A DNA stretch of 64,000 nt from Macrostomum hystrix (taxonomy: Eukaryota > Animalia > Platyhelminthes): positions 4,402,001-4,466,000 of the forward strand of contig CATNEN010000025.1 in assembly GCA_950097015.1 (NCBI GenBank), given 5' to 3'. A model generated the notes under the pieces. The model did not search any database and was not told where the DNA came from. It saw only the letters and a list, made by a program, of their open reading frames with translations. Below are positions 15,185-53,856 of this stretch, in pieces. How positions within the stretch are numbered: the stretch's first letter is position 1; each line of letters begins with the position of its first letter. A program made the translations under genes and the position numbers.

Positions 15185-16068
15185 CCTCTCAGATCTCAAC
15201 TAGAGAAACTTGTCCTCACAGATTCTATGGGAGAAACTAGTCTAGCACTCCCAGATTCTATGGGAGAAACTCTAGTCTAGCCCTCCCAGATTCTATGGGA
15301 GAAACTCTGATCTCGCCCTCCCAGATTCTATGGGAGAAACTCTAGTCTAGCCCTCCCAGATTCTATGGGAGAAACTCTGGTCTCGCCCTCCCAGATTCTA
15401 TGGGAGAAACTCTAGTCTAGCCCTCCCAGATTCTATGGGAGAAACTCTAGTCTAGCCCTCCCAGATTCTATGGGAGAAACTCTAGTCTAGCCCTCCCAGA
15501 TTCTATGGGAGAAACTCTAGTCTAGCCCTCCCAGATTCTATGGGAGAAACTCTAGTCTAGCCCTCCCAGATTCTATGGGAGAAACTCTAGTCTAGCCCTC
15601 CCAGATTCTATGGGAGAAACTCTGGTCTAGCCCTCCCAGATTCTATGGGAGAAACTCTAGTCTAGCCCTCCCAGATTCTATGGGAGAAACTCTAGTCTAG
15701 CCCTCCCAGATTCTATGGGAGAAACTCTGGTCTCGCCCTCCCAGATTCTATGGGAGAAACTCTGGTCTCGCCCTCCCAGATTCTATGGGAGAAACTCTAG
15801 TCTAGCCCTCCCAGATTCTATGGGAGAAACTCTGGTCTCGCCCTCCCAGATTCTATGGGAGAAACTCTGGTCTAGCCCTCCCAGATTCTATGGGAGAAAC
15901 TCTGGTCTCGCCCTCCCAGATTGTATGGGAGAAACTCTAGTCTACCCCTCCCAGATTCTATGGGAGAAACTCTAGTCTAGCCCTCCCAGATTCTATGGGA
16001 GAAACTCTAGTCTAGCCATCCCAGATTCTATGGGAGAAACTCTAGTCTAGCCCTCCCAGATTCTATGG
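15185..16068. repeat. 35-bp tandem array, ~24 copies, in Shal intron 4
   Basis: Unit ccctcccagattctatgggagaaactctagtctag; tgggagaaac recurs at 15541 and 15576. Confidence 0.95.
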
Positions 16069-17127
16069 AAGACACACTCAGCGTCTGCCACTTAAATTTA
16101 AATTCGGCACGCTAATCTAGTCTTCGTAGCGCAGTTCTGTGTTGTTTAAATAGCCAATAAACCTTTTTGTGCCATGTATTGCATGTGAAAAGATCGCACT
16201 AAAATTGTTTCTAACTACGCATTCTCTTTTTTAGATAATTCACATTACGCCTTTAATCTATCCTGTTCGATAATTAATGCCGTAAATTAACTTTAGCATA
16301 CTTAGCGGCACACGCGAATGCACTCTAAAGCATTAAATCTGTAATCAGTCTAGCTTGACAGGTAAAGTACAGTACTTAGACTAGTGCTTTAAACAATTTA
16401 GCCGCCTAGCACTTTTAGAAATTAAAGACTAATTCAAGCATTTAAAGTTAAGTATGTTTACTTCTAACTCGTAGTATGCATGCGCCTTGCTGACAAAAAT
16501 TATCCATCTTAAAAATGCGCCGCTATCTTCGTTTTAAATGCAGCTTCGTCGACTAAGAGTAAGAACGTGCAAAATAAGCATTTCAATTTTTGGTGCAAAT
16601 ATTGCAGCACAAATATATGTCTTTATTAGTGTCTCAAATTTTTCTTTTGTGTAAATTTGCATAATCCTTTATTTATAAAATAGCCTGATCCCATTTTTTA
16701 TTTTTGGGTTAAATTTTTCTTAGCAATTACGTTCTTTAAGTTAATCTTTCAATTTTGTCTGGGTGAAAATGCAAGTATTGTCTGTGAATAATGTGTTCTT
16801 GTGTATAATTAACATTTCAGCTTTTGTTTGCATCCATTCATTCTTTGTCAGTTGAAGTTTTTGCTTCTAAAAGAGAAAAGTTCTAGATAAAAATGAATCA
16901 TACATTGAGCATATTAAGCATACTAAGGCTAGTTGTACACAGTTGTACACAGTTGTCCGCGGACTGTGTAGGCCGCCACGCTCAGCCAAATTTCTTTCCT
17001 TGGGCTCTCAGTCACAAGCATCTGTCGATGTGTTTCTTAACAATAATAATTTAACTAACTTGACGCCTTGATAGTCTAGATCCGTGCCTTACAATCCCAT
17101 TTTTTTGTTCATTTGTTAATTCTACAG

Positions 17128-21678: not shown

Positions 21679-23058
21679 ATGCGCACTTGTCGCCTAGGAG
21701 CAAAGACGCGTCACGTTGTACTAGTGCATGGCCTACTTGGTTGGGGCCCCGGCCAGCTAGTTCTGCCTAGCGGCGCCGTCTCCTACTGGGAGACAGCCGT
21801 AGATTCGTGCACTAACACAAGCGGCCTGACGGTGCTCGAAGCTGGAGTTGGGCCAATCAGCTCTGTGCACGATCGAGCCTGCGAGTTGTACGCTCAGATT
21901 CGCGGCCGACCAACAGACTATGGCGCTGAGCACTCAGCCAAGCACGGCCACAAACGCTGGGGCCCAGACTTTTCTGGGCGCGGCCTGCATCCAGACTGGT
22001 GCGCTGAGCAGCCTATTCATTTAGTCGGTCATTCGGCCGGCGGTAATACGTCTAGACAATTACAGCGTTTGCTAGCTGATGATTTCTGGTCTGAGGGCAC
22101 TGCGCCCAGTTGGGTGACATCGATTACCTGTCTGGCCAGTCCACTTAACGGATCACCCGCTGCTTATCTGTTTGGATGCGATCCGTCCACCGGCCATTTC
22201 CGCTGGCTGCGCGTGCTTTCTGTCCTCGGCCGATTATTGCCACGCAAGTGGACTTTGGAGCATTGGGGCCTCTCAGATGCTGATGTTGCCTATCCCTCTA
22301 AAATGCGCTCGAGCGGCCTATTTTCTGGCATTGACAATCTAGCTTATGATGTATCAATGCAAGGCTGCTCTACATCTAATTACTCTGGCCGTCTGGACGA
22401 CTGGCCGGACACTTACTACATGTCCTGCACTGCTAGGTGCACTGTGTCGAAATCGGCCGACTCATCTGTTACACCTAGCCGCAATTGTCGCTCTCTATTG
22501 TTACCCTCTTGTCGCTATCTGTGCTCGCACAAAGTGCGTGTCAATTACCAATCACAGCAGTTGTCCAACAGTGCTAAAATCGAGTATTATTGTCCGGGCA
22601 GTGATCCGGACTGGTGTCACAACGATGGCTTAGTACCTTTAGCCAGTCAGCGCTACCCGTTAGTTGGGCATCGTCAGATTGCCGGCGAGTTAAAGCTTGA
22701 CTCCATTGAACCGCCAGAGTCTGGCCGGTGGTACTACACTGATTCTGCCGAGTTGGCCGGCTTGCCTAGGCTGTCTCCCTGGGATCACGCCGATTTCACT
22801 GCACTTCGCAGTCCCTTACTGAATCTGGCACTTTCTACAGAGAGCAATATTTATCGATTTTTAAGATGTCGCCGTAGAAATAAGACAAATAACAATCCTT
22901 TAACGAACGCTTCAACGGTAGTAAACGAAGACTACAATTTGAACAGCCAGCAAGACGAAGATCCCGATGCAAACTCTGAGGCAGGTGGTAATGTGTCGCG
23001 ATGCACACAGAGGCTCTTTTATGAGCGACTCTACCGACACCTCAGCTGCCTGGCTTGA
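21679..23058 (+). CDS. Intronless alpha/beta-hydrolase lipase of the Geobacillus/Staphylococcus (family I.5/I.6)-like type
   Basis: VLVHGLLGWG oxyanion region; VGPISSVHDRACELY; DYGAEHSAKHGH Zn-site-like insertion; nucleophile GHSAG; HNDGLVP Asp; WDHADF His. Confidence 0.9.
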   Translation: MRTCRLGAKTRHVVLVHGLLGWGPGQLVLPSGAVSYWETAVDSCTNTSGLTVLEAGVGPISSVHDRACELYAQIRGRPTDYGAEHSAKHGHKRWGPDFSGRGLHPDWCAEQPIHLVGHSAGGNTSRQLQRLLADDFWSEGTAPSWVTSITCLASPLNGSPAAYLFGCDPSTGHFRWLRVLSVLGRLLPRKWTLEHWGLSDADVAYPSKMRSSGLFSGIDNLAYDVSMQGCSTSNYSGRLDDWPDTYYMSCTARCTVSKSADSSVTPSRNCRSLLLPSCRYLCSHKVRVNYQSQQLSNSAKIEYYCPGSDPDWCHNDGLVPLASQRYPLVGHRQIAGELKLDSIEPPESGRWYYTDSAELAGLPRLSPWDHADFTALRSPLLNLALSTESNIYRFLRCRRRNKTNNNPLTNASTVVNEDYNLNSQQDEDPDANSEAGGNVSRCTQRLFYERLYRHLSCLA

Positions 23059-23699: not shown

Positions 23700-25985
23700 A
23701 TGCCGCAATCATCATCTTCATCCGATTCGTCCGATGATGAAACAGTTAAGAAGCCAATAGCACCCGCTGGTAAAGCAGCCAAAAGTCCCGCTAAGCCCAG
23801 TGCTAGCTCAGCTGCAAAAAATCCACAGAAGCGTCCAAAGAAGCAAGAGTCGTCGAGTGATTCCGATTCTTCGGACAGCAAGCCGCCTGTCAAGAAGGCT
23901 GCGCCAGCAAAAAAGGCAGCTCCCGTACCGCAGAAGGTAGTGCCTGAAGATTCCTCTAGCGACTCGTCGTCCGAGGATGAGAAGCCACCTGCCAAGAAGT
24001 CAAACCCGGCTGCCAAGCCTGTTGCTAAGGCCCCTGCTAAGAAAAAAGACTCATCCTCGAGTGACTCTTCATCTGAGGACGAAAAGCCGCCAGCTAAAAA
24101 AGCCGCAACTGCCACACCTGTGGCTAAGCCTGTTGTAAAAACCCCTGCTAAGAAAAAGGAATCATCCTCAAGCGACTCTTCATCTGAGGACGAAAAACCA
24201 CCAGCTAAAAAGCCAGCAGCTGCCACACCTGTGGCTAAGCCTGTTGTAAAAACCCCTGCTAAGAAAAAGGAATCATCCTCAAGCGACTCTTCATCTGAGG
24301 ACGAAAAACCACCAGCTAAAAAGCCAGCAGCTGCCACTCCTAAGCCTGTCGCCAAGACCCCGGCCAAGAAAGAATCTTCGTCTAGTGACTCCTCAGAGGA
24401 TGAAAAGCCTCCAGCTAAAAAGCCAGCAGCTGCCACTCCTAAGCCTGTCGCCAAAGCCCCGGCCAAGAAAGAATCTTCGTCTAGTGACTCCTCAGAGGAT
24501 GAAAAGCCTCCAGCTAAAAAGCCAGCAGCTGCCACACCTGTGGCTAAGCCTGTTGTTAAGACCCCTGCTAAGAAAAAGGACTCATCCTCAAGCGACTCTT
24601 CATCGGAGGATGAGAAGCCGCCTGCCAAAAAACCTGTAGCTGCCACACCAACTGCTAAGCCCGTCGGTAAGGCGCCGGCCAAGAAAGAATCTTCGTCTAG
24701 TGACTCCTCGGAGGATGAGAAACCTCCAGCTAAGAAGCCAGCAGCTGCCACTCCAACGGCTAAGCCCGCTGCTAAGGCTCAGGCCAAAAAACAGGAGTCG
24801 TCCAGTGAGTCCTCTGATGATGAACAGCCCCCGGCAAAAAAGACGGCGCTTAAAGCCAATAAAAAGTCACCAGTATCCAATGAGAAGCTACCTAATGGTA
24901 AGCATTCTGCTGCCAAGCCAACCCACTGTCTTCTGTTCAGCAATCTGGATCCGTCTATTAGCCTTACCGATCTAAAAAGCTTTCTAGATGATCAGAGCAT
25001 TACTCGCACAGACGCAGGCCTAGCAAACGCTCCGATTGCAATGGTCTGCTTTGGCAGTAAGGCTGACGCTGATGCTGCCGCGTTGAAATGCCAAAATGCG
25101 TCGATTAAAAACCACCGATTTAACATTAACGCCTTGTCGGGGTCAGTTGAGCATCTACCCTCTCTACTGGGCGAAGGCGGTCCAAAGCCTACTGGACTGC
25201 CTGCCAGAGACTTTTCCCAAAAAGACAAGTCTCGCGAAGATCTACGTGGTCAGGCCCGTTCTGTCATCTTGCTGAATGTACCAGCCGACTCTGAGGAAGC
25301 CGACGTTCGCGCCGCTTTTCCTGGAGGCTCGCGCTACAATCTCAAGACTAAACCCGGATCCGACTCCGGTGTCTGTTTCGTGGACTTTAACTCCGAAGCG
25401 GAGTGCTCCACTGGATTCGACGAATTTCGTCGCGTCGGAGAGTTCGGCGGCCGTGAAGTTGCTGTGGCCTTTATTGCACCCAGGCAAGAAAGAAAGTCGT
25501 TTGGCGGCGGTGGTGGTGGCGGCGATAACCCTCCTTCAAAGACTGTTGGCGTTTTTAACCTTCCATACAGCGCTTCTGTTGATCAGTTGTGGGAGCATTT
25601 CCCAAAAGCGCAGGATTTGTTCATTCCGAAGAATGAAGAAGGTCAAAGTCGCGGATTCGCAATTGTTACGTTTGATTCAGTTGACAGCGCAAGTGAAGCC
25701 GTTAACAGTACATTAACTTTAGACGGCCGTCAGGTGCGCATCGAATACCGTGAGGATCGAAGCGGCGGTGGTGGACGCGGCGGCGGTCGCGGTGGTGGAC
25801 GTGGCGGATTCGGCGGTGGACGCGGAGGCGGCGGCTTTGGTGGCGGCCGCGGCGGTTTCGGTGGCGGTCGCGGCGGTTTTGGTGGCGGTCGTGGCGGAGG
25901 TCGCGGTGGCTTTGGCGCCTCAAAGCCTCGCGTCGAGATTAACACTGGCAAGCAGAGCCGCAAGTTAGACTCGGATTCGGACTGA
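23700..25985 (+). CDS. NCL: Intronless nucleolin-like protein
   Basis: More than ten alternating SSSDSSSEDE acidic/Ser and TPAKK/KP basic repeats; three RRM-like domains (last has TVGVFNL and RGFAIVTF); C-terminal RGG/FGG box. Confidence 0.9.
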   Translation: MPQSSSSSDSSDDETVKKPIAPAGKAAKSPAKPSASSAAKNPQKRPKKQESSSDSDSSDSKPPVKKAAPAKKAAPVPQKVVPEDSSSDSSSEDEKPPAKKSNPAAKPVAKAPAKKKDSSSSDSSSEDEKPPAKKAATATPVAKPVVKTPAKKKESSSSDSSSEDEKPPAKKPAAATPVAKPVVKTPAKKKESSSSDSSSEDEKPPAKKPAAATPKPVAKTPAKKESSSSDSSEDEKPPAKKPAAATPKPVAKAPAKKESSSSDSSEDEKPPAKKPAAATPVAKPVVKTPAKKKDSSSSDSSSEDEKPPAKKPVAATPTAKPVGKAPAKKESSSSDSSEDEKPPAKKPAAATPTAKPAAKAQAKKQESSSESSDDEQPPAKKTALKANKKSPVSNEKLPNGKHSAAKPTHCLLFSNLDPSISLTDLKSFLDDQSITRTDAGLANAPIAMVCFGSKADADAAALKCQNASIKNHRFNINALSGSVEHLPSLLGEGGPKPTGLPARDFSQKDKSREDLRGQARSVILLNVPADSEEADVRAAFPGGSRYNLKTKPGSDSGVCFVDFNSEAECSTGFDEFRRVGEFGGREVAVAFIAPRQERKSFGGGGGGGDNPPSKTVGVFNLPYSASVDQLWEHFPKAQDLFIPKNEEGQSRGFAIVTFDSVDSASEAVNSTLTLDGRQVRIEYREDRSGGGGRGGGRGGGRGGFGGGRGGGGFGGGRGGFGGGRGGFGGGRGGGRGGFGASKPRVEINTGKQSRKLDSDSD

Positions 25986-26757
25986 CCGCAAAGTGACTGA
26001 TAATATCGTCATCATAAACTATTTTTATTCGCAAATTATATTGAAATTGTATTGACACGAGGCTTGTTTCACCATCTTTTTGTTTGCGCGTCGTGATCGT
26101 GTATCGATTTTTTCCGGTTAAATAATTTTAATTGGGATTGTTAAATTGTTTATTATTTAACTTACAATCAGAAAAGGGTTCAAAACAAGTGCTTTTATCC
26201 AATATCATGGCTTGGATTATTGCAACATGGCTTAGATTATTGACAAGTGTGTATGTACATCGACAAGTACATTTTGACAAGCTAATTAGGAAGACTAATC
26301 AGAAATTAGCTAATATAAATTGTATCGTTGACCTGTTAAAGATAATTAAAAAGGTAAAAATCAATTTTTTGAGAACCGCTTTTAACCAAAAAACGAAAAT
26401 TAGTCGCTTTTTCTGTACGCTTGTGTAGGTTTCGCAAATTATTCAAAACCAGCAAGTTAATTATTATGTTAATTAATTATTGATTTCCTCCATTAATTTT
26501 GATGTTATATTTTCCGTCTAAATTTAACAGCTTGCTCGAAACGTGCTGTCTAGTTTCACTAATGTAATTTCTTTTTGGTGAACACCTGCGAAAAAAACTT
26601 TTGCACGGAGCGGCATTTTGCATTTGCACCCATACCAATTCCTGTCTAATTTAGCATCACATAATCCAACTCATTGGATTAAACTGTCTAAAAGCAGGCT
26701 TTAAATTGGTGACCATTTGACAACTTTTTTGTGCCTGTCGCAGAAGAGCAAACGCCG

Positions 26758-27260
26758 TGTATTATCTGAAGCGTTTTAAGCACTACAAGTGCTGTTGGAA
26801 TAGAAAAAACTCAAAGAATCAATCGCTTTGTCTTTCGTTTTTACTTTACTTGCTTTTTAACTCGCTGGAAATAGGCTAGGCACTAAAATTATGAACTACG
26901 ACAACAGTGGTTGGTAGATGTAGTAATGAATTAAGACTAGCTAACTATTTCTTATGCAACAAATTGAGTCCTCGCAGTAAGAGCCCGTTCATACGGCAGT
27001 GAGCCAATTCAGGCCGAGTCAAAATATATTTAAGTTTAACAGAGCGATAAGGAAGGGGGGTTGGTTAGAAGGGTAACATGTGCGCGGACTGGCCAGAGGT
27101 AAGAGATGAAACGCAGGGGAAGGAAAGAGAGACGAGGTGAGAGCCAATCAGAGCCGAGAGAGAAAATAAGGCTAATAAATAAATTGAACAGGCAGGGGGA
27201 GAGACGAGAGAGTACATTAAGAGGGCGCGTGAAATGAGAAACCAGGGAGAAGTTAATACA
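26758..27260 (-). mobile_element. 3' LTR (503 bp) of the BEL/Pao element
   Basis: The minus strand starts TGTATTA (27260) and ends TAATACA (26758), a 7-bp perfect inverted terminus. It is immediately preceded by T-run + GGGAGAG polypurine tract (27261-27274). TATA-like TAAATATA at 27025-27032. Confidence 0.85.
26954..26997 (-). other. Spliced-leader-exon-like sequence inside the LTR
   Basis: GCCGTATGAACGGGCTCTTACTGCGAGGACTCAATTTGTTGCAT; ~38/45 identical to the Macrostomum SL as I recall it (GCCGTAAAGACGGTCTCTTACTGCGAAGACTCAATTTATTGCATG). No GT donor follows. Confidence 0.75.
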
Positions 27261-27475
27261 CTCTCCCAAAAAAATACGACGTGATTTCTTTTTTTTCTCA
27301 AAGTTGAATAAAGTTAAAGTAACGAAAAGTAACGAATCGTAGATTTTGGAGCACAAATGTCTCGACTTACACTCGTAATTAGCAAAATTTGAAAAAAAAC
27401 TCAAAACCGAAAAACAGGAGCATAAGCAAAGAATAAAGTAACTAGAGATTTTCAATTGAAAGGTTAATGAAAAAA

Positions 27476-30400
27476 CTAATCAGAGATCGAGAATTCTAGT
27501 GGAACGAGAGCCTGCACGGGTCTCCTAATGCACTCCGCCCTCTGAGAGTCAGCAGACCGGGCCAAACGGACCAGGGCAGACCTGCAGACACCGTGAAACA
27601 CAAGTTTGTGGCAGTGATTGATAAGTAGACGCTCGAGCGGAGCATAGTGAGGCAAAAGGATCGGATTGTTTACTTGGAACGGCACATTGTTCGAGAGGCG
27701 GCCTCGACAACGGATGAGTCCGAAGTCGTCAATGAAAACATTAGGATTGCGACTGAGTTGAGTCGACTCAGTTTTGTTGCGTAAATGATTTAACTCTGAA
27801 GAGAAGCAGACTTCCTGATAGTCTGAGATCCAAAGATTCTGACTTTCAGTAAGTTCTTGAGCTGTGATAGGCGAAGTACGCTTGTCTCCCCCCGTGACTG
27901 ACTCTTTAATATTGTAGATGAATCGACGGACCCATGCAGTTGTCCGAAGCAGTTTTGTCCAGTTGGAAAACTTTGTCAAGTCAATGATTGACGAGATTGA
28001 CGATGGAGTCGAAATACGACCTAAATTAGTGTTCGTTTCGGCTGTCGACATTGCAGCCGAGTTAGACTCGAGTGTTTCTAGCTTCGCTGAGCTACATGTA
28101 TGTACTGTTTCTGATACTGAAGTAGCTACATGTAGAGTGAGATCGGCTTCAGATAAGACTGCATTTGTCTCCCGAACGTCTTTTTGAAGCTGCTTTTGCA
28201 GCTGCGTTTTGACCGGTGAGCGGAGGAAAGAGGGGCCGTGTAGCGACGTGTCGTTGTGAATGAACTTTTCGAGTGAGCATCCACGTGACGGCAAGTCAGC
28301 TGGGTTTCGCTCCCCAGGCACGTGAAACCATTCGGATGGCGAAGAGAGACGTCGAATTTCATTGACTCTGTTCTGAACAAACAGTTTCCTCTGTTTGGAC
28401 TCATTTTTGGTCCACTGCAAGGTGTTCATGCTGTCTGTCCAGAAGTTGCGAATAATTGACGGGAAATTCTGCGAAGTCACGTGCACCAGACGGGTCAAGA
28501 TTAATGCTGCGAGAAGCTCTAGTCGAGAAATTGACATCTGGGAGATCGGTGCAACTCGCGTTTTCGACGTCACCAGATTGGATGACGTGGAACCGTCTGT
28601 GTAGGTTGCAGTCACGTAGATGCACGCCGCAAATGCCTTATCGCTGGCATCGCAGAAGCCATGCAAGGTGATTTGGGTAGGCTTTTGAGCAGATTTAAAG
28701 AGAAACCGTGGAACTTCGAACGTATGCACTTGAAGCGATTTGAGCCACTGATTCCAGGTTTGACAAATGTCTGCGGGGATCTCTTCGTCCCAGGACAGTT
28801 TGCGAATGCACAGTTGTTGCAGGAGGCACTTTGCAAGAGTAAGAATAGGGGAAATTAGACCGAGTGGATCATACAGCTTCGCGAGAAAGGCTAGGATCGA
28901 CCGTTTAGTAGGTAGCTGAAGTGAGGCTAATTCTGCATATTGACGGAAGTCAAGAATTAGAGAATCGCGAACTGAATCCCATCGAACGCCAAGAACCTTC
29001 TCGGTATGCCCAACGTCTTCTGAGGGAACACCCGAAAGAGATGGCTGAGAGTTTGATTGCCACTGTCGCAGGTTCATTCCCGCAGACATGAAAATTGCCT
29101 TAGCTTCCTGACGCAATTGATGCGCGTCATCCACGGAGTCACAAGTTGTCAACGTACATGTCGCGGCTGAGAATTGAGGTGCTTTTAGGATATTTCGACT
29201 TTTGATAGTCTCGAGATGGTGCAGAATTGTGACTTTTAGAAGAGCTGGTGAACAGGTGAGACCGAATGGAACTCGGCAAAATCGGTACTGAACGATTGGA
29301 CCTTCACCATCGGGATTGTCCGTCTGGTGCCAAAGGAAGCGAAGATAATCTCTGTCTCCAGGATCAATCGCGACTTGAAGAAAAGCCTTTTCAATGTCCG
29401 CTTGAATCGCTACCGAGTTCCATCGGAACCGAATCAGCAGCGCCGGAATCTGTGGAAAATCATTCGGTCCGATTTGTAGAAGATCGTTAATTGAAAAGTC
29501 ACTTTTGTTCCGCTTGGCCGAACCGTCATGAACGATTCGTAGCTTTGTGTGTTCACTGTCAGATTTGGCAACACACGAGTGAGGCAAGTAGTGAACTACG
29601 GATTGTGGTTTCCGCAAGTCTGACGGGGAAACTCGTTCGATAATCCCGGAATTTTCCTGGTCAGCAAGGATGTCGTTGTACTTAGCTTGAAGAAGCGAAT
29701 CTTTGGAAAGCGTGCGCATCGTTGAACGCCATCGACTGTATGCTAGATCGAAGTGGTTATTGAGCGAAGGTTGTGCGTCTGAATGCTTCCACGGAAGCTG
29801 GACAGAGTAGCGATCGTGAGCATAGTGAGGAGCACAGTGGAAGGGCTCAACATCGTCTTTTGAACCGGGTTCAGCGATCCCTAGCGTTTCGAGCTTCCAA
29901 AAGTGGGACAGCTGTTCATCGCTACTGAATTCTTCAGTGGTGGATTTGTGAGACTAGAGCGCAGGCGGAGCCAAGTCTAGCGGAGTTTGAGGACCCGTAA
30001 GATTTTTCAGAGCTGGTGGATTTGTGAGACTCGGCACCTGCGGCCTGGTGGATTTGAATCTCAGTTTTCAGACACTTGAGGAGCGAAGCAACGAATCGAT
30101 CTCCTTGCCCATGTGACTAGCCGAGCGATGCAACTCCAAACGAAAATCAGGCGGGCAACGCTTTAGGAGGCTTGAGAGAAAGAGAGTTTCGTAGGAGGAC
30201 TCAGAGACACCTTGATTTTTAAGACTGAGAGTCGGGGCGGCAATGTCGTCATGAAAGCGTTGCAGCTCTTGCAGGGAGGTATTTGCGAGGCGGAGATCGG
30301 AGAGTTGCGACATTAGATCGCGGATGATCAGATCCTGATTGCCAAATCTCTCTTTAAGAGTGGCCAATGCCTCAGAGTAGTTGGCCGCAGTGACTGCAAA

Positions 30401-30643
30401 ACCACGAATTGAGGCTCGAGCAGAGTCAGACAGAGAGTCGAGAAGATAGTTAAATTTGTCGATATCCGAAAGAGTGGGATTTGAATCAATTGACGACGAG
30501 AACTGATCCCAGAAAGGTTGCCATTCAGAAATTGAACCCTCGAAGACTGGGATTTGCCTTTTGGGTAGTTTGATGGATGACTGCTTAACTGCTGGATGAT
30601 CGTACGACAATTTGGTGGTGTCATGAATATGAGGTGCAGTCAA
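27476..30643 (-). mobile_element. BEL/Pao LTR retrotransposon gag-pol, internally deleted
   Basis: Gag DUF1759-type (KLPKRQIPVFEGSISEWQPFWDQF), RT (KLRIVHDGS, QADIEKAFLQV), Pao RNase H/A17 (GFCDAS, SKTRVAP, RLELLAA, WTDS, NPADLPSRG), integrase Zn-finger start joined to the C-terminal RPVQALVPLE. Confidence 0.95.
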
Positions 30644-30918: not shown

Positions 30919-32931
30919 TGTCCCCCTTCTGATAAGAAAGGTGTGTTCTCGAGAAGAAACCAACGAGTGAGAATACATATTAGTTATAGAATGCGAATAA
31001 ACAAAACCATATAGTGCGTTGTCAGTTAGGACTCCAATTCAATTGAGATGGGACAGTAATTTATAGATCATGGCTCAAAACGATCAGGTGCGCGCCGAGC
31101 ACGCGCGCTCCTGCGCGGTGCAAATCCAGCTTCCTGTTGGTCATTCGCAGGCTGCTCCTCCTGGTCCCTGACCTCAGAAGCGGCTTCCTCCTCCTCCTCT
31201 CCAGTCCCAGGTAGCGGAGCGATTTGGTTGTTGCTCGCCAGTCGCAATTGGTCCCCAGCCAACAGCCAGGAAGTATTATGTCCTCGCGACATCAGGAACT
31301 GGGCTTGGGAGGAAGGAGCATCAGCATTGGGCTTGTAAACCACCCTGGCGCCCTGTTGAAACGTAGAGACGACTGGAACTCGAAGAGATCGTCCAAATAG
31401 CAATTCAGTCGGTCTCTTACCGCGCCACAGAGAGGAATTGCGGTGGTGCAGAAGCACTTTCTGCAAGTAGGACAGGAAGTCACAGTGAGTTAGTCGCTGA
31501 GTCCAGGCCTGTAGTGCCGTTGAGTTAGTAAGGAACGTGGCCTCTTGGGCAGTAGATTTGAGTTGTTATATAGTCGCAGCCACATAGTGCTGCCGACGTG
31601 CAGCCCAGTCATGAGCGCATTACGCAACACATACATGCCAAGAGCAGTGCACGTTGACCGTGACGCTATGCCAGCGTGGGAGGGAGAGGGCAACGCAGTG
31701 CACTACAAGGCCTTAAGGGCTCTTTTAACTGTCTGCACGGCGCGCTCCGCGGCACCGTTAGATTGTGGTGAATAGCGGGGTGATTCTAATTTGCGCGCTC
31801 CGTTTGCCTGCAGCCAGTCCAACAAAACGTCAGATGTAAATTCGGCCCCGTTATCGAAAACTACGACCTCTGGAACACCAAACCGGCAAAAAACAGTTCG
31901 GAGGCACTTCAGGACGCTTTCGGCAGATCTATCCTTTGATGGAAAGGCCTCAATCCATCCGGAAAAGGCATCGACAACTATCAGAATGTTCCCAACTCCA
32001 GGCACAAAGGCCCAATCTATGTGGATTCTCTGGAATGGGGCCGATGCCGGGGGCCAAATGTCGCGTGACTTCATCAGACGTGGCCTCAATTTAGCGCATG
32101 CATAGCACTGGCGCACAAACTCCTCCGTGTCGTGATGCATTCCAGGCCACCAGCAGGTCAGAGACAGCAGATTGTATGTCGCAGAAACTCCTAAATGAGT
32201 ATCGTAAACCGCTTTGAATGCTTCGAGGCGCAGTCGAGGCGGGATGAAGATACGCCTTCCCATGTACAACAGACCATTCTCAATCGTCAGGCGCTCAGCT
32301 ACCTTCTTGAACGGCATCTCCACTTCTGAGCAATCTTTCCAGTTTCCTGAACGGATTCTCTTCATCACCCGCTGAGTTACTGAGTCGGCAGCGAGTTCGA
32401 TAGCAATTCGCTGTGGATCTACTTTAGGGGACTCAAAGGCCACACAGTTGATGGTCGCCACGACCTCCTTTGGCTCGGAGTCCACTTTTTCAAACGGCAG
32501 GCGCGAGAGCGCATCGGCGTGTGGGATCTTTACACCGGGAAAATATTGGATTCGGAAATCAAATTGCATCAAATATAGTGCCCATCGACTGATCCTAGCC
32601 GAAGTGCTTGTAGGGATCGCACCTCCAAAAAGGCGCAGAAGTGGTTGGTGGTCTGTTTGGATTGTGAATTTTCTTCCCTGGAGGTAGTGCTTCAGGAGGC
32701 ACACCGCCCAAAATATTGCAAGGGCCTCTCTCTCGATGTTGGAGTAGTTCTCCTCAGCTTGCGAAAGCGTTCTGGAAATGAAAATTACCGGATGGTCCTC
32801 CTGCGTCAAGACGCCGGCCAGCGCTCCTTTAGATGCGTCCGTCGTCAACGTGACCTCCTTCTCCAGTGAGTATGGTTGCACTACAGGTCTCGTGGAGATT
32901 TCCCTTTTCAAGCTCTCGAAAGCTTGTCAGC
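30919..32931 (-). mobile_element. Ty3/Gypsy element A pol remnant (RNase H, integrase), 5'-truncated
   Basis: TTDASKGALAGVLTQ, YSNIEREALA, FTIQTDHQPL (RNase H); THLG..WWPGM..C..C Zn finger; RIHIDWA, VVFDNGAEF, PQSNGAAER (DDE integrase). Frame broken after 31703. Confidence 0.95.
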
Positions 32932-39737: not shown

Positions 39738-40035
39738 GCGCGGTGCTGACACTTGTATTGTTTATATAAATAAATTGAAGCATGTTGGACACGTCCCAAA
39801 TTACGCAGCCCTAAATTATTGACCTCTGTCAGTTTTGTTATATTTTCTAATTATACTATCTCCATCCTTTGTATTTTCCTAGCAATAAACCTTATTTTCT
39901 GCTATCCCTGTGTCACTGTTAAAAGCCCGATAATGTGTGCCTATTGTACTATTGGTACCAATGTGGTATCATTGCTGACTGAACCCATATTTCATTGCGC
40001 TTTGTCAACCTGTCAGATTCTGGCATCACAGACTT

Positions 40036-41807
40036 GCTTATTTCCTAGCTTACAGGGGCGCAACTGTTGGGCTCATGCTTATTTCCTAGCTTACAGGGGC
40101 GCAACTGTTGGGCTCATGCTTATTTCCTAGCTTACAGGGGCGCAACTGTTGTGCTCATGCTTATTTCCTAGCTTACAGAGGCGCAACTGTTGGGCTCATG
40201 CTTATTTCCTAGCTTAAAGAGGCGCAACTGTTGGGCTCATGCTTATTTCCTAGCTTACAGGGGCGCAACTGTTGGGCTCATGCTTATTTCCTAGCTTACA
40301 GAGGGCGCAACTGTTGGGCTCATGCTTATTTCCTAGCTTACAGAGGCGCAACTGTTGGGCTCATGCTTATTTCCTAGCTTACAGAGGCGCAACTGTTGGG
40401 CTCATGCTTATTTCCTAGCTTACAGGGGCGCAACAGTTGGGCTCATGCTTATTTCCTAGCTTACAGAGGCGCAACTGTTGGGCTCATGCTTATTTCCTAG
40501 CTTACAGAGGCGCAACTGTTGGGCTCATGCTTATTTCCTAGCTTACAGGGGCGCAACTGTTGGGCTCATGCTTATTTCCTAGCTTACAGGGGCGCAACTG
40601 TTGGGCTCATGCTTATTTCCTAGCTTACAGGGGCGCAACTGTTGGGCTCATGCTTATTTCCTAGCTTACAGGGGCGCAACAGTTAGGCTCATGCTTATTT
40701 CCTAGCTTACAGGGGCGCAACTGTTGTGCTCATGCTTATTTCCTAGCTTACAGAGGCGCAACTGTTGGGCTCATGCTTATTTCCTAGCTTACAGGGGCGC
40801 AACTGTTGGGCTCATGCTTATTTCCTAGCTTACAGGGGCGCAACTGTTGGGCTCATGCTTATTTCCTAGCTTACAGGGGCGCAACAGTTGGGCTCATGCT
40901 TATTTCCTAGCTTACAGGGGCGCAACTGTTGGGCTCATGCTTATTTCCTAGCTTACAGGGGCGCAACTGTTGGGCTCATGCTTATTTCCTAGCTTACAGG
41001 GGCGCAACAGTTGGGCTCATGCTTATTTCCTAGCTTACAGAGGCGCAACTGTTGGGCTCATGCTTATTTCCTAGCTTACAGGGGCGCAACTGTTGGGCTC
41101 ATGCTTATTTCCTAGCTTACAGGGGCGCAACTGTTGGGCTCATGCTTATTTCCTAGCTTACAGGGGCGCAACTGTTGGGCTCATGCTTATTTCCTAGCTT
41201 ACAGGGGCGCAACAGTTGGGCTCATGCTTATTTCCTAGCTTACAGGGGCGCAACTGTTGGGCTCATGCTTATTTCCTAGCTTACAGGGGCGCAACTGTTG
41301 GGCTCATGCTTATTTCCTAGCTTACAGGGGCGCAACTGTTGGGTTCATGCTTATTTCCTAGCTTACAGGGGCGCAACTGTTGGGTTCATGCTTATTTCCT
41401 AGCTTACAGGGGCGCAACTGTTGGGCTCATGCTTATTTCCTAGCTTACAGGGGCGCAACTGTTGGGCTCATGCTTATTTCCTAGCTTACAGGGGCGCAAC
41501 TGTTGGGCTCATGCTTATTTCCTAGCTTACAGGGGCGCAACAGTTGGGCTCATGCTTATTTCCTAGCTTACAGGGGCGCAACAGTTGGGCTCATGCTTAT
41601 TTCCTAGCTTACAGAGGCGCAACTGTTGGGCTCATGCTTATTTCCTAGCTTACAGAGGCGCAACTGTTGGGCTCATGCTTATTTCCTAGCTTACAGGGGC
41701 GCAACTGTTGGGCTCATGCTTATTTCCTAGCTTACAGGGGCGCAACTGTTGGGCTCATGCTTATTTCCTAGCTTACAGAGGCGCAACTGTTGGGCTCATG
41801 CTTATTT
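40036..41807. repeat. 41-bp tandem array, ~43 copies
   Basis: Unit gcttatttcctagcttacag(g/a)ggcgcaactgttgggctcat; atttcctagc recurs at 40081 and 40122. Confidence 0.97.
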
Positions 41808-42760: not shown

Positions 42761-43823
42761 TTTTTATATTCGGTTCATTTTTACTGCCTGGCCCCTTCTG
42801 AGGCGAGAAGTATTCAGCGAAATATTCCGTCGTATCGAGGTCTCATTGACGCCTGACAGGGTTTTGAACAGGAAGAATTGAAATATCTGCTTTGTGCTCA
42901 GCAGAACCTATGCTATTGAGAATTGCAGCCTTTTTGTGAGTTCGCAATCAGAATCCAAGCTGTGTGTAAAACTATTATTAACCGTTTAGTGCACAAGTAC
43001 ACACTAAAGAGACCCTCTGAGGCCTGGGAATGGAATTGGTTAGGGGTGCTAGTTTAAAATCCTTTTTTATTGCCGACGTGTTCGGAGTGAGGGCTAACAC
43101 AACGAATTGGCTCAACAACTACTTATGATTTCCTATTTTCTAAAATGAGGATCGGTGGGAATAAAGAGATAGGAGAAAAGTGGGCCTCTTTCCGATCTGA
43201 TTTCGCCATTACGAGAGAATACCGTAAAGTCCATCATAGATCATAAATTATGCTTGAGAATAATAAGCTTAAATGAGCACACTTTTTGTGTCTCATAAAC
43301 TATTGTGACAGAATATTATGTAGCTTTCTAAAATATTTTTCGCATTCCGACCCAATTCCCGCAAAAGTGCAAACTCGAGCTCTTTAGATTTTATTTTTCG
43401 AAATTCTTACTTTCCCTGCTGAATCTCCGATCAGATCCAAGACATGGAAGCTTTTCTGTTGCTTAAAAATCTTTATTCTCTACTTCTATTAGTAGTATAT
43501 CAAAATTTCTATTAAAAAATATATATTGCTGTCCAACTTTGAACTCTTCATTAGTGCCGTTGCTGCTCTACAAACATTTTTACATTCTTGTCCTCGAAGA
43601 ATTACTGCAAATCATATGATTGTGCTGTGATCTAGTGTAGTGTAGTGTAGGGCAATTTAAACTGTTAGTTGACAAAAATTTGGAAACAGAATGCCACTAC
43701 TTGTACAATCGTATCATTCTTCATTCTTTTCGATTGAATCGAAGTTGAAAGCTGACGATGTACTCAATCTAAAACAAATCCGGCATTCAAAGCTACCAAA
43801 TAAAATTGCCGCCAACAGCCGAC

Positions 43824-45779
43824 CTGTCTCATCTCTCCCGTGTCATTTCTCCCCTGTCTCATCTCTCCCGTGTCATTTCTCCCCTGTCTCATCTCTCCCG
43901 TGTCATTTCTCCCCTGTCTCATCTCTCCCGTGTCATTTCTCCCCTGTCTCATCTCTCCCGTGTCATTTCTCCCCTGTCTCATCTCTCCCGTGTCATTTCT
44001 CCCCTGTCTCATCTCTCCCGTGTCTCATCTCTTCCCTGTCTCATCTCTCCCGTGTCATTTCTCCCCTGTCTCATCTCTCCCGTGTCATTTCTCCCCTGTC
44101 TCATCTCTCCCGTGTCTCATCTCTTCCCTGTCTCATCTCTCCCGTGTCATTTCTCCCCTGTCTCATCTCTCCCGTGTCTCATCTCTTCCCTGTCTCATCT
44201 CTCCCGTGTCATTTCTCCCCTGTCTCATCTCTCCCGTGTCATTTCTCCCCTGTCTCATCTCTCCCGTGTCATTTCTCCCCTGTCTCATCTCTCCCGTGTC
44301 ATTTCCCCCCTGTCTCATCTCTCCCGTGTCATTTCCCCCCTGTCTCATCTCTCCCGTGTCATTTCTCCCCTGTCTCATCTCTCCCGTGTCATTTCTCCCC
44401 TGTCTCATCTCTCCCGTGTCATTTCCCCCCTGTCTCATCTCTCCCGTGTCATTTCTCCCCTGTCTCATCTCTCCCCTGTCTCATCTCTCCCGTGTCATTT
44501 CTCCCCTGTCTCATCTCTCCCGTGTCATTTCCCCCCTGTCTCATCTCTCCCGTGTCATTTCCCCCCTGTCTCATCTCTCCCGTGTCATTTCCCCCCTGTC
44601 TCATCTCTCCCGTGTCATTTCCCCCCTGTCTCATCTCTCCCGTGTCATTTCTCCCCTGTCTCATCTCTCCCGTGTCATTTCTCCCCTGTCTCATCTCTCC
44701 CGTGTCATTTCCCCCCTGTCTCATCTCTCCCGTGTCATTTCTCCCCTGTCTCATCTCTCCCCTGTCTCATCTCTCCCGTGTCATTTCTCCCCTGTCTCAT
44801 CTCTCCCGTGTCATTTCTCCCCTGTCTCATCTCTCCCGTGTCATTTCCCCCCTGTCTCATCTCTCCCGTGTCATTTCTCCCCTGTCTCATCTCTCCCGTG
44901 TCATTTCTCCCCTGTCTCATCTCTCCCGTGTCATTTCTCCCCTGTCTCATCTCTCCCGTGTCATTTCTCCCCTGTCTCATCTCTCCCGTGTCATTTCTCC
45001 CCTGTCTCATCTCTCCCGTGTCATTTCTCCCCTGTCTCATCTCTCCCGTGTCATTTCCCCCCTGTCTCATCTCTCCCGTGTCATTTCTCCCCTGTCTCAT
45101 CTCTCCCGTGTCATTTCTCCCCTGTCTCATCTCTCCCGTGTCATTTCTCCCCTGTCTCATCTCTCCCGTGTCATTTCTCCCCTGTCTCATCTCTCCCGTG
45201 TCATTTCCCCCATGTCTCATCTCTCCCGTGTCATTTCTCCCCTGTCTCATCTCTCCCCTGTCTCATCTCTCCCCTGTGTCATCTCTCCCGTATCTCATCT
45301 CTTCCCTGTCTCATCTCTCCCGTGTCTCATCTCTCCCCTGTCTCATCTCTCCCGTCTTATCTCTCCTGTGTCTCATCTCTCCCCTGTCTCGTCTCTCCCC
45401 TGTGTCATCTCTCCCCTGTGTCATCTCTCCAGTGTCTCATCTCTCCAGTGTCTCATCTCTCCAGTGTCTCATCTCTCCAGTGTCTCATCTCTCCAGTGTC
45501 TCATCTCTCCAGTGTCTCATCTCTCCAGTGTCTCATCTCTTCCCTGTGTCATCTCTCCAGTGTCTCATCTCTCCAGTGTCTCATCTCTCCAGTGTCTCAT
45601 CTCTCCCGTGTCTCATCTCTCCCCTGTCTCATCTCTCCCGTCTTATCTCTCCTGTGTCTCATCTCTCCAGTGTCTCATCTCTCCAGTGTCTCATCTCTCC
45701 CCTGTGTCATCTCTCCAGTGTCTCATCTCTCCAGTGTCTCATCTCTCCCCTGTCTCATCTGTCCCCTGTCTCGTCTCTC
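43824..45779. repeat. CT-rich minisatellite: 30-bp unit (two ~15-bp halves) grading into a 16-bp unit
   Basis: tgtctcatctctcccgtgtcatttctcccc repeated, then tgtctcatctctccag repeated from ~45420. Confidence 0.97.
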
Positions 45780-51400: not shown

Positions 51401-53270
51401 TTTCCATTCCGCTTCCCTACCTTAATAAACCCACTTTCCATTCTGTTCTCCCCTACCTTAATAAACCCACTTTCCATTCCGCTCCCCTACCTTAATAAAC
51501 CCACTTTCCATTCCGCTTCCCTACCTTAATAAACCCACTTTCCATTCCGCTTCCCTACCTTAATAAACCCACTTTCCATTCCGCTTCCCTACCTTAATAA
51601 ACCCACTTTCCATTCCGCTCCCCTACCTTAATAAACCCACTTTCCATTCCGCTTCCCTACCTTATTAAACCCACTTTCCATTCCGCACCCCTGTCTCAAT
51701 AAACCCACTTTCCAGACCGCTCCCCTGTCTCAATAAACGCACTTTCCACTCCGCTCCCCTACCTTAATAAACCCACTTTCCATTCCGCTTCCCTACCTTA
51801 ATAAACCCACTTTCCATTCCGTTCTCCCCTACCTTAATAAACCCACTTTCCATTCCGCACCCCTGTCTCAATAAACCCACTTTCCAGACCGCTCCCCTGT
51901 CTCAATAAACCCACTTTCCATTCCGCACCCCTGTCTCAATAAACCCACTTTCCATTACGCTCCCCTACCTTAATAAACCCACTTTCCATTCCGCTCCCCT
52001 ACCTTAATAAACCTACTTTCCATTCCGCTCCCCTACCTTAATAAACCCACTTTCCATTCCGCTCTCCCCTACCTTAATAAACCCACTTTCCATTCCGCTC
52101 TCCCCTACCTTAATAAACCCACTTTCCATTCCGCTCTCCCCTACCTTAATAAACCCACTTTCCATTTCGCTCCCCTACCTTAATAAGCCCACTTTCCATT
52201 CCGCTCCCCTACCTTAATAAACCTACTTTCCATTCCGCTCCCCTACCTTAATAAACCCACTTTCCATTCCGCTCCCCAAACTTAATAAACCCACTTTCCA
52301 TTCCGCTCCCCTACCTTAATAAGCCCACTTTCCATTCCGCTCCCCTACCTTAATAAACCCACTTTCCATTCCGCTTCCCTACCTTAATAAACCCACTTTC
52401 CATTCCGCTTCCGTACCTTAATAAACCCACTTTCCATTCCGCTTCCCTATCTTAATAAACCCACTTTCCATTCCGCTTCCCTACCTTAATAAACCCACTT
52501 TCCATTCTGTTCTCCCCTACCTTAATAAACCCACTTTCCATTCCGCTCCCCTACCTTAATAAACCTACTTTCCATTCCGCTTCCCTACCTTAATAAACCC
52601 ACTTTCCATTCCGCTTCCCTACCTTAATAAACCCACTTTCCATTCCGCTTCCCTACCTTAATAAACCCACTTTCCATTCCGCTCCCCTACCTTAATAAAC
52701 CCACTTTCCATTCCGCTTCCCTACCTTATTAAACCCACTTTCCATTCCGCACCCCTGTCTCAATAAACCCACTTTCCAGACCGCTCCCCTGTCTCAATAA
52801 ACGCAATTTCCACTCCGCTCCCCTACCTTAATAAACCCACTTTCCATTCCGCTTCCCTACCTTAATAAACCCACTTTCCATTCCGTTCTCCCCTACCTTA
52901 ATAAACCCACTTTCCATTCCGCACCCCTGTCTCAATAAACCCACTTTCCAGACCGCTCCCCTGTCTCAATAAACCCACTTTCCATTCCGCACCCCTGTCT
53001 CAATAAACCCACTTTCCATTACGCTCCCCTACCTTAATAAACCCACTTACCATTCCGCTCCCCTACCTTAATAAACCTACTTTCCATTCCGCTCCCCTAC
53101 CTTAATAAACCCACTTTCCATTCCGCTCTCCCCTACCTTAATAAACCCACTTTCCATTCCGCACCTCTGTCTCAATAAACCCACTTTCCAGACCGCTCCC
53201 CTGTCTCAATAAACCCACTTTCCATTCCGCTCTTATGTCTCAATAAACCCAGTCTCTATTTCGCTCCCCT
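48406..53270. repeat. 34-bp satellite, ~140 copies, with a 1064-bp higher-order repeat
   Basis: Unit ccttaataaacccactttccattccgctccccta; diagnostic variants recur 1064 bp apart. Confidence 0.97.
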
Positions 53271-53856
53271 ATTCATATGTAATTTTTGTTACATTGTTTC
53301 CAACCCATTTAATCCGCTTATTGTTTCGTAGAGATTTTTGTATCTTTCTGATTTTTAGATATCTGTTTAATTCACTTTTGTTGGTACTAAAATCCTAAGT
53401 GAATTTAGATGCTTTGGTTTTTATTTTGCCTTTATAAGACAAATCAGTTTATGCGGACCAATTTATCCTGTTGATTGATGAGACTGTCAATCAGATAAGA
53501 ATTTGATTGAATTTCAAATAAGTAGTACTAATTGCTTAATTAGTTTGTCTGTATGTCAATCTAACTTACGTTTACCTTGGCATCAAATAAAAGCCGAAAA
53601 AGTCAAGAATGTGACATTGTCGTTTAGCATAATAACTGAAATTCGTATATTTTTTGTTTCTTCCAAAAGAACAATGAAACAGAGTGGTCGCAATGTTGAT
53701 TGCTTCAGCCAAGGTTGTTAATAATTCCGAAAAATTATTTTCGTGTTCAGTTAAAAAAATGTTCGGCAACGAGATGCAGAGTTTAACATTTAACTAGATC
53801 CGTTGCTATGCGGTTGTCACGCGGTTGCTACGCAGTTGCTATGCAACCCGTAGAAT

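What the first reader, a model, noticed from the sequence alone, without database searches (positions are those of the whole stretch)
26954..26997. BEL/Pao LTR encodes a spliced-leader mimic at its predicted transcription start
Seen: the 503-bp LTR (26758-27260, minus) has a TATA-like TAAATATA at 27025-27032. Starting 28-35 nt downstream is GCCGTATGAACGGGCTCTTACTGCGAGGACTCAATTTGTTGCAT. Recalled, to be verified: the Macrostomum SL exon is GCCGTAAAGACGGTCTCTTACTGCGAAGACTCAATTTATTGCATG, giving ~38/45 identity. The differences look non-random. Three fall in the loop of the CCGT/ACGG hairpin, one turns a U-A pair of the UCUU/AAGA stem into U-G, and the terminal AUG that flatworm SLs can donate as a start codon becomes AUA. 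No GT donor follows, so this is not an SL RNA gene. Inference: the element transcribes a cis-encoded SL-like 5' end, so its RNA may resemble a trans-spliced host mRNA for export, translation or silencing evasion without trans-splicing. SL-targeting non-LTR elements (CRE/SLACS, NeSL) are known; I cannot confirm whether an SL mimic at an LTR start site has been described.
Basis: partly seen in the sequence, partly recalled or inferred. Interest (0 to 1): 0.88.

Follow-up and report, generated by a model that had tools for sequence, protein, structure and literature searches.

The report
Spliced-leader relic inside a retrotransposon LTR
A flatworm BEL/Pao retrotransposon carries, near the end of its long terminal repeat, a slightly mutated DNA copy of the host's 45-nt spliced leader; it is most likely a scar left when a trans-spliced element RNA was reverse-transcribed, and it now seems to serve as the repeat (R) used for strand transfer, not as a proven host-mRNA disguise.

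Summary
The 44-nt motif is real (window 26997-26954, minus). It matches the host spliced leader (SL) at 38/45 positions. I found the host SL in bona fide SL RNA genes of this genome: GTAAG donor, Sm-like site, ~11.6-kb arrays. The LTR is 321 bp here (27260-26940; 323 bp in typical copies), not 503 bp. It has TGT..ACA ends and 5-bp target duplications. The window copy is the 3' LTR of a 5'-truncated, internally deleted BEL/Pao element. The SL-like block lies 14 nt before the LTR end, next to a tRNA-Lys primer-binding site in 5' LTRs, and 31-33 nt after a TATA-like box.

Homologous BEL/Pao LTR families (fam1-3) carry the block, and a LINE copy carries the host SL at its 5' end. Similarity to the SL gene is confined to the exon. 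That fits capture from spliced RNA followed by cis inheritance.

One solo LTR is exactly the predicted product of host-SL trans-splicing onto a family variant. One LTR is a between-family hybrid with its crossover inside the block. Both suggest the block acts as R.

Younger copies have drifted away from the host SL, which argues against strict mimicry. No RNA data were available, so the TSS is untested.

This scan already reported the same scar on other DNA of this genome, and a 2025 paper notes it briefly in parasitic flatworms.

The parts
26953..26997 (-). SL-derived block (45 positions; 38 identical to the host SL exon)
26940..27260 (-). True LTR (321 bp here, 323 bp in typical copies). It starts TGT. 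The last 14 nt of this copy differ at three places from most other copies, including the terminal dinucleotide. It is the 3' LTR of the element.
   Evidence: 5-bp target duplications around solo copies
26940..26952 (-). Short U5-like tail between the SL-derived block and the LTR end. In 5' LTR copies elsewhere the primer-binding site follows directly.
27021..27032 (-). TATA-like box (TAAATATATTTT). Its first T of TATATTTT is at -31 relative to the block (-33 in most copies, which have 2 extra bases).
27261..27274 (-). Polypurine-tract-like run (TTTTTTTGGGAGAG) immediately upstream of the 3' LTR
   Evidence: similar G-rich runs, such as TTTTGGGGGGAG, precede other 3' LTRs
27476..29719 (-). BEL/Pao pol ORF (RVT_1, Peptidase_A17). 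No integrase domain was detected.
30068..30643 (-). BEL/Pao gag-like ORF (DUF1759)
26942..30618 (-). Extent of homology to a full copy on contig C39 (L069). The window copy lacks the 5' LTR and about 770 bp of leader. It also has an internal gap of about 1.1 kb relative to that copy.

Best explanation
The block is a DNA copy of the mature host spliced leader. An ancestor of a clade of BEL/Pao elements acquired it when an element RNA that had received the SL by trans-splicing was reverse-transcribed up to its 5' end. Since then it has been inherited in cis as part of the LTR, between the core promoter and a very short U5, next to a tRNA-Lys primer-binding site. It has slowly diverged from the host SL. 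In the window's family (fam1) and its non-autonomous partner (fam2) there is no other sequence between the TATA-like box and the block. The block is therefore most likely (part of) the R repeat: transcribed at both RNA ends and used for minus-strand transfer. Its homology to the host SL also lets an element RNA that is trans-spliced again complete reverse transcription. What is shown: the origin from the exon, the family-wide cis inheritance, the anatomy and the drift. What is inferred: the R role and the TSS.
For: 1. The host SL RNA gene was identified: exon, GTAAG donor, Sm-like AUAUUUUUAG, terminal hairpin, fold z = -4.0. At least 18 copies lie in ~11.6-kb arrays.

2. Similarity of the LTR to that gene starts at exon base 1 and stops at the donor. 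The upstream promoter (p about 0.04) and the U5-versus-intron comparison (p about 0.07) are not convincingly similar.

3. The LTR has at least 42 genomic matches. Its ends are TGT..ACA, and 5-bp target duplications flank at least 10 solo copies.

4. The PBS directly follows the LTR in 5' copies. It is complementary to the 3' end of tRNA-Lys(UUU).

5. The block is in both LTRs of full elements. The LTRs of the C39 copy are 100% identical over 266 bp.

6. The homologous LTR families fam2 and fam3 carry the block, and fam3 also lies next to a BEL/Pao pol. Fam3 shares the CCAACCCCCC and TATA motifs and part of U5 with fam1. Two further repeat families (fam4, fam5) also hold SL-like blocks; fam5's tail begins like fam1's U5, but neither was shown here to be an LTR.

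7. L047 is a solo LTR with target duplication AGGGC. It has the perfect 45-nt host SL joined to CATAAGAAATC.. This is exactly the product expected if the host SL were trans-spliced onto the TTTGTAG|CAT variant. That variant exists in 9 copies, and the L047 junction is unique in the genome. Its U3/SL junction is seamless, which implies homology-guided transfer onto the SL-like block at the RNA's 3' end.

8. L045 is a solo LTR with fam2 U3, including the fam2 base at -1, and fam1 U5. The crossover therefore lies within the block.

9. A LINE copy carries the host SL at its 5' end, so TE RNAs are trans-spliced in this genome.

10. PMC12582326 reports 597 SL-like loci inside LTR and LINE elements of parasitic flatworms and gives the same origin hypothesis.
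Against: - No RNA evidence was available. TSS, poly(A) site and therefore the R boundaries are unmeasured.
- The first capture needs a minus-strand transfer without R homology, which is rare.
- L045 and L047 are single copies.
- L045 could be an ancestral form rather than a recombinant.
- U5 of fam1 shows a weak (10/14) resemblance to the start of the SL intron, so capture of an unspliced SL RNA followed by loss of the donor is not fully excluded.
- No canonical poly(A) signal is evident downstream of the block.
Confidence: 0.7

Rival explanations
1. Functional mimic. The element starts transcription at the first base of the block so that its RNA looks like a trans-spliced host mRNA. This would improve export or translation, or help it escape silencing.
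For: - The TATA-like box lies 31-33 nt upstream of the block in fam1 and fam2. The real SL RNA gene has similar spacing (TATAAT at about -34).
- The block has been retained through the diversification of several families.
- The terminal AUG is lost in fam1, fam2 and fam4, which avoids an upstream start codon.
Against: - Younger copies are less host-like than older ones. Six of seven older fam1 copies keep the host bases at positions 27 and 38.
- Between the older and younger groups, the block holds 4 of about 20 differing LTR columns, so it is not more conserved than the rest.
- The most numerous fam3 subfamily is also diverged.
- In fam3 the homologous TATA box is about 70 nt upstream, so the SL would be internal to the transcript.
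- Hairpin preservation is not significant.
- There is no Sm site. By established knowledge of SL RNA maturation, no TMG cap is therefore expected.
- A cis-encoded leader involves no splicing event.
Confidence: 0.17
2. DNA-level capture of an SL RNA gene with its snRNA-type promoter into the LTR, or capture of unspliced SL RNA, followed by loss of the splice donor.
For: - TATA spacing is similar in the LTR and the SL gene.
- There is weak promoter similarity (p about 0.04).
- Fam1 U5 matches the start of the intron at 10/14 positions if three donor bases are skipped.
Against: - Neither similarity is significant once the search space is considered.
- Fam2, fam3 and fam4 tails show no intron similarity.
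- The match ends at the exon boundary in every family.
- No Sm site or intron hairpins are present.
Confidence: 0.06
3. A passive scar with no role at all, merely tolerated in U5 or U3.
For: The block drifts at about the rate of the rest of the LTR.
Against: - In fam1 and fam2 nothing else lies between the TATA box and the 14-nt tail, so some part of the block must provide R for the element to replicate.
- Young copies with identical LTRs exist.
- L047 and L045 show strand-transfer products that resolve inside the block.
Confidence: 0.07

Closest known systems
SL-like loci inside LTR and LINE elements of parasitic flatworms (Mol Biol Evol 2025, PMC12582326)
   Same: There too, partial or complete leader sequence without donor or Sm site lies inside retrotransposons. 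The authors attribute it to integration of elements whose transcripts had been trans-spliced.
   Different: That paper gives only a one-paragraph by-product of SL gene filtering. Here the case is a free-living Macrostomum-type genome. The block is placed precisely (14 nt before the LTR end, next to the PBS, 31-33 nt after a TATA box). It is shown to be cis-inherited across homologous BEL/Pao families, and there is fossil evidence that it works as R.
Relic spliced leaders in retro-copied dinoflagellate genes (Slamovits and Keeling 2008, cited in PMC12582326; recalled, not read here)
   Same: In both cases an SL sequence is fixed in genomic DNA because a trans-spliced RNA was reverse-transcribed and integrated.
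   Different: The dinoflagellate relics are in host genes, which are trans-spliced again. Here the relic is a heritable part of a mobile element's terminal repeat.
SL-gene-targeting non-LTR elements (CRE, SLACS, NeSL)
   Same: Both link retroelements to spliced leaders.
   Different: Those elements insert into SL RNA genes by a site-specific endonuclease. Here the SL copy is inside the element, the copies are dispersed with 5-bp target duplications, and the SL arrays examined were not found to be interrupted by this family.
Retroviral and LTR-retrotransposon R region
   Same: The block is a short repeat between the promoter and U5, adjacent through U5 to a tRNA-Lys PBS. Recombinant LTRs resolve within it.
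   Different: Its sequence derives from a host small nuclear RNA exon and remains homologous to the 5' end of about a third of host mRNAs. The R boundaries are not measured.

Membership tests
BEL/Pao LTR retrotransposon | Terminal repeats with TG..CA ends and short target-site duplications | tested here: met
   The LTRs are 323 bp with TGT..ACA ends. 5-bp duplications flank solo copies L003, L004, L007-L011, L016, L019 and L030. The window copy's own terminal bases are altered, and its partner LTR is missing.
BEL/Pao LTR retrotransposon | PBS complementary to a tRNA 3' end directly after the 5' LTR, and a polypurine tract before the 3' LTR | tested here: met
   TGGCGCCCGAACGGGGACT.. follows 5' LTRs and is complementary to tRNA-Lys(UUU) plus CCA. 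A G-rich tract precedes the 3' LTRs.
BEL/Pao LTR retrotransposon | Pao-type gag and pol domains | tested here: met
   DUF1759, RVT_1 and Peptidase_A17 were found in the window and in the C39 copy.
BEL/Pao LTR retrotransposon | Integrase (rve) domain | tested here: not met
   No rve or zinc-finger integrase hit was found in the pol ORFs of the window copy or the C39 copy at E <= 0.01. The family may depend on a partner element for integrase, or the domain is too diverged to detect.
SL RNA gene | GT splice donor immediately after the leader exon | tested here: not met
   The LTR has ..GCAT followed by AAGAAAT. The true genes have ..GCATG followed by GTAAG.
SL RNA gene | Sm-binding site and downstream hairpins, with a significant SL RNA fold | tested here: not met
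   These are present in L059 (fold z = -4.0) and absent from the LTR. The LTR ends 14 nt after the block and folds no better than shuffles.
SL relic from a reverse-transcribed trans-spliced RNA | Similarity confined to the exon, from base 1 to the donor, with no promoter or intron similarity | tested here: met
   Fam3 carries the perfect 45-nt exon joined to unrelated sequence.
SL relic from a reverse-transcribed trans-spliced RNA | Evidence that element RNAs are trans-spliced and then copied back into DNA | tested here: met
   L047's junction equals the predicted trans-splice product of the TAG variant. A LINE copy carries the host SL at its 5' end. There is no direct RNA evidence.
Functional mimic of a trans-spliced mRNA 5' end | Transcript begins at base 1 of the block and carries an SL-type cap | not testable with these tools
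   No RNA run was listed. Only the TATA spacing is available as indirect support.
Functional mimic of a trans-spliced mRNA 5' end | Selection keeps the block identical, or structurally equivalent, to the host SL | tested here: not met
   Younger copies differ from the host at more positions than older ones. Stem preservation gives P = 0.20.
SL-targeting non-LTR element (CRE/SLACS/NeSL) | Site-specific insertion into SL RNA genes | tested here: not met
   Copies are dispersed on many contigs with varied 5-bp target duplications.

The most novel reading that the evidence does not exclude
Using the host spliced leader as the LTR's R repeat is an adaptation to life in a trans-splicing host. Any element RNA whose 5' end is replaced by the host SL at an acceptor upstream of the PBS still carries R-homologous sequence, so it stays competent for minus-strand transfer. 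L047 is a fossil of this. The host-like leader may additionally aid translation. This would be a new way for a retroelement to neutralise, or exploit, a host RNA-processing pathway.
Probability: 0.2. Interest if true: 0.75.

Novelty: new variant of a known kind. Interest (0 to 1): 0.45.

Why it matters
SL trans-splicing can cut off the 5' end of any transcript that exposes an acceptor site. For an LTR element this removes R and should end replication. A clade of elements that has built the leader itself into its terminal repeat shows how mobile DNA and trans-splicing interact. It offers a natural marker for past trans-splicing of transposon RNA. It also matters practically: LTR-encoded leader copies can be mistaken for SL RNA genes, or for trans-spliced 5' ends, in flatworm genome annotation. 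If the block proved to be functional, it would be a new case of a retroelement borrowing a host RNA identity tag.

Tried and rejected
- **RNA evidence.** The look-up of sequencing runs listed no RNA run for a full family copy, and its single use is spent. Read laying was therefore not used, and the TSS and poly(A) site remain unmapped.
- **L088 as a chimeric retrocopy.** L088 has fam2 U3, then a host-type SL, then unrelated sequence. Its downstream 409 bp are unique in the genome, and the join is not at the exact exon end. The idea is not supported and L088 is left unexplained.
- **Fam5 'LTR pair'.** The two copies 4155 bp apart belong to a duplication at least 1 kb long, identical to the locus edges. 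They are not a demonstrable LTR pair.
- **Promoter or intron capture.** Both similarity tests were non-significant.
- **Structure-preserving substitutions.** These were not significant.
- **Rfam.** No family matched the LTR or the SL RNA. Only a U1 snRNA next to the SL gene was found.
- **M. lignano LTR sequences.** No supplementary files are held for the M. lignano LTR paper, so they could not be checked.
- **Second trans-splice fossil.** A search at the AAG|AAATC acceptor gave only one diverged hit in a different repeat, L091, which is not conclusive.
- **Procedural note.** In one search I compared majority bases of 17 younger and 7 older copies of the 323-bp non-coding LTR, only to locate the differing columns. 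The same conclusion is visible in the individual copies listed.

Full report
**1. Observation**

Reading the minus strand of window 26600-27400 shows the reported 44-mer at 26997-26954. It is preceded by TAAATATATTTT at 27032-21 and followed by AAGAAAT.., not GT. The 44-mer occurs once in the window, with none expected by chance.

A search of the whole assembly (220 Mb, 42 contigs) with 27260-26758 gave at least 42 matches, and all of them stop at query position about 319. In typical copies the repeat is 323 bp, starts TGT and ends ..AAGAAATCGTTACA. Ten or more solo copies are flanked by perfect 5-bp target duplications. In the window the repeat is 27260-26940. Its last 14 nt differ at three places from most copies, including the terminal dinucleotide.

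**2. What the window copy is**

Upstream on the same strand lie a polypurine-like tract (27274-27261), a pol ORF with RVT_1 and Peptidase_A17 (27476-29719) and a gag-like ORF with DUF1759 (30068-30643). This makes it the 3' LTR of a BEL/Pao element. There is no second LTR in the window.

I compared it with a full copy on contig C39 (L069). That copy's two LTRs are 100% identical over 266 bp. The window copy lacks the 5' LTR and about 770 bp of leader, and it has an internal gap of about 1.1 kb. No integrase domain was detected in either copy.

**3. The host spliced leader**

A pattern search for the leader core found 130 sites of two kinds.

- One kind lies in tandem arrays on contigs C15, C17 and C42, mostly 11,645 bp apart, with at least 18 listed copies. 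It reads as a textbook SL RNA gene (L059:1436-1544:-): a 45-nt exon, then GTAAG, an Sm-like AUAUUUUUAG and a terminal hairpin. The fold z-score is -4.0.
- Its last 35 nt are identical to the published Macrostomum lignano SL, whose gene also has a GTAAG donor (PMC8629364).

The LTR block matches it at 38 of 45 positions, with differences at 7, 8, 9, 14, 27, 38 and 45.

**4. The block is a family-wide, cis-inherited LTR component**

- Every near-full-length copy of the window's family (fam1, 26 aligned) carries the block at the same offset, 14 nt before the LTR end.
- Both LTRs of full elements carry it.
- In 5' LTR copies the next bases are TGGCGCCCGA... This is complementary to the 3' end of a tRNA-Lys(UUU) gene of this genome plus CCA.
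- A second family (fam2) has a 351-bp LTR, with pairs about 1.8 kb apart, so it is non-autonomous. It shares a 118-nt stretch covering the TATA box and the block at 97% identity. It has a different U5 tail, and its U3 diverges further upstream.
- A third family (fam3) lies next to a BEL/Pao pol and has at least 26 copies, some in pairs about 6.8 kb apart. Its LTR is visibly homologous: it shares the CCAACCCCCC and GTT.AA..T.AAATATA motifs and part of U5. A minority subfamily holds the perfect 45-nt host SL, and the majority subfamily holds a diverged version.
- Two more repeat families (fam4, fam5) carry their own diverged versions. Fam5's tail begins like fam1's U5, but neither was shown here to be an LTR (for fam5).
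- A LINE copy (L052) has the host SL directly in front of its endonuclease ORF.

**5. Origin**

In every family the similarity to the SL RNA gene begins at exon base 1 and ends at the splice donor. The sequence upstream of the block is not convincingly similar to the SL gene promoter (p about 0.04, driven by the TATA-like box). U5 is not convincingly similar to the intron (p about 0.07 for fam1, none for the others).

That is the signature of a copy made from a mature, spliced RNA that was reverse-transcribed up to its 5' end. It is not the signature of captured gene DNA. It agrees with the brief note in PMC12582326 that 597 leader-only loci in parasitic flatworms lie in LTR and LINE elements and may come from trans-spliced retrotransposon transcripts.

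**6. Evidence that the block acts as R (inference from genomic fossils)**

(a) In fam1 and fam2 only 27-29 nt separate the TATA-like box from the block, and only 14 nt separate the block from the PBS. The repeat needed at both RNA ends can hardly be anything else.

(b) L047 is a fam2 solo LTR with target duplication AGGGC.
- Its U3 is near the family norm, but its block is the perfect 45-nt host SL followed by CATAAGAAATCAAGACA.
- A fam2 variant with TTTGTAG before CATAAG, which creates an AG acceptor, exists in 9 copies.
- Trans-splicing of the host SL onto that acceptor predicts exactly the L047 sequence, including the 4-nt 'extra' GCAT. A homologous template switch would not produce that extra GCAT. 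The junction is unique in the genome.
- The seamless U3/SL join implies that the strong-stop cDNA, ending in the complement of the host SL, annealed to the SL-like block at the RNA's 3' end.

(c) L045 is a solo LTR with fam2 U3, including the fam2-specific base at -1, and fam1 U5. The crossover therefore lies inside the block, as expected for intermolecular first-strand transfer in R.

These are single copies, so I rate the R role at about 0.6.

**7. Tests of the mimicry idea**

In favour:
- The first T of TATATTTT is at -31 in the window and at -33 in most copies. The true SL gene has TATAAT at about -34. A start at or near base 1 of the block is therefore plausible for fam1 and fam2.

Against:
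- Older, more diverged fam1 copies (L024, L025, L027-L030) keep the host bases at positions 27 and 38, and mostly at 8 and 9. The young, numerous copies have changed them. The block holds 4 of about 20 columns that distinguish the older from the younger copies, so it is not more conserved than the rest of the LTR and is moving away from the host sequence.
- In fam3 the homologous TATA motif is 62 nt before the SL, so the leader would be internal to the transcript.
- The supposed structure-preserving pattern of the differences is not significant (P = 0.20). The hairpin folds do not beat shuffles. In the real SL RNA the exon pairs mainly with the intron.
- By established knowledge, TMG capping of SL RNA depends on Sm binding. 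The LTR has no Sm site.

No RNA data could be obtained, so a functional role is neither shown nor excluded.

**8. Relation to earlier notes of this scan**

Three earlier notes on other DNA of the same genome describe the same scar: s1-306094 (Gypsy LTRs), s1-300406 (a young non-coding LTR element, probably my fam2) and s1-291356 (a solo LTR). I reached the relic reading before seeing them. I checked the literature claim myself. I did not test the Gypsy case.

**9. Verdict**

The LTR size, the copy's status and the 'non-random differences' are wrong or unsupported.

The best reading is an anciently captured spliced leader that has become part of the R/U5 region of a BEL/Pao clade. It still interacts with the host's trans-splicing, with L047 as the fossil of that interaction. 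This is a new, better-resolved variant of a phenomenon already noted in passing for parasitic flatworms. It is of moderate interest. The adaptive version (R = SL as insurance against trans-splicing, or as a translational aid) remains an open, testable possibility.

Noticed in passing
L059:1837-1999 (-) and L059:1436-1544 (-); arrays on contigs C15, C17, C42: The SL RNA gene lies about 290 bp downstream of a U1 snRNA gene (Rfam RF00003, 151.7 bits). Both lie in a tandem unit of about 11.6 kb with at least 18 copies.
   Followed up: partly
L052 (C7:9274919), minus strand: A non-LTR (LINE) copy with an Exo_endo_phos endonuclease ORF starts with an almost perfect host SL. This suggests that LINE RNAs are trans-spliced before retrotransposition.
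   Followed up: partly
L088 (C39:11248329): A fam2 LTR with a host-type SL breaks off near the end of the leader and abuts sequence that is unique in the genome. Its origin is unexplained.
   Followed up: partly
L063 / L064 (C15:173617 and C15:175433): The two LTRs of one fam2 element differ in the 5' part of the block (host-like in the 5' LTR) and in U5. The 5' LTR is followed by a duplicated PBS. This suggests recombination or conversion after, or during, insertion.
   Followed up: no
L006 (C30:3978579-3979002): Two fam1 LTR fragments lie head to head, with an inverted PBS between them. This may be an auto-integration or rearrangement product.
   Followed up: no
L039 (C1:16047917): A dispersed SL RNA gene copy outside the arrays has an intact donor and intron, but the first 5 of its exon bases are replaced.
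   Followed up: no
window 31703-32911 (-): A Ty3/Gypsy-type ORF (RNase H, integrase zinc finger, rve) lies directly upstream of the truncated BEL/Pao fragment. The transposons are nested or adjacent.
   Followed up: no
window 23700-25985 (+), repeats 24015-24766: A 761-aa ORF has a C-terminal RRM domain and seven copies of a 111-bp (37-aa) lysine/proline/serine-rich repeat.
   Followed up: no
window 15214-16072, 40035-41807, 43823-45779, 48406-53271, 55839-57323, 57791-59143: Six long satellite arrays (periods 35, 41, 30/16, 34, 21 and 17/30 bp) fill about a fifth of the window.
   Followed up: no
window 21679-23058 (+): A 459-aa ORF has a lipase-like C-terminal domain (PF24708).
   Followed up: no
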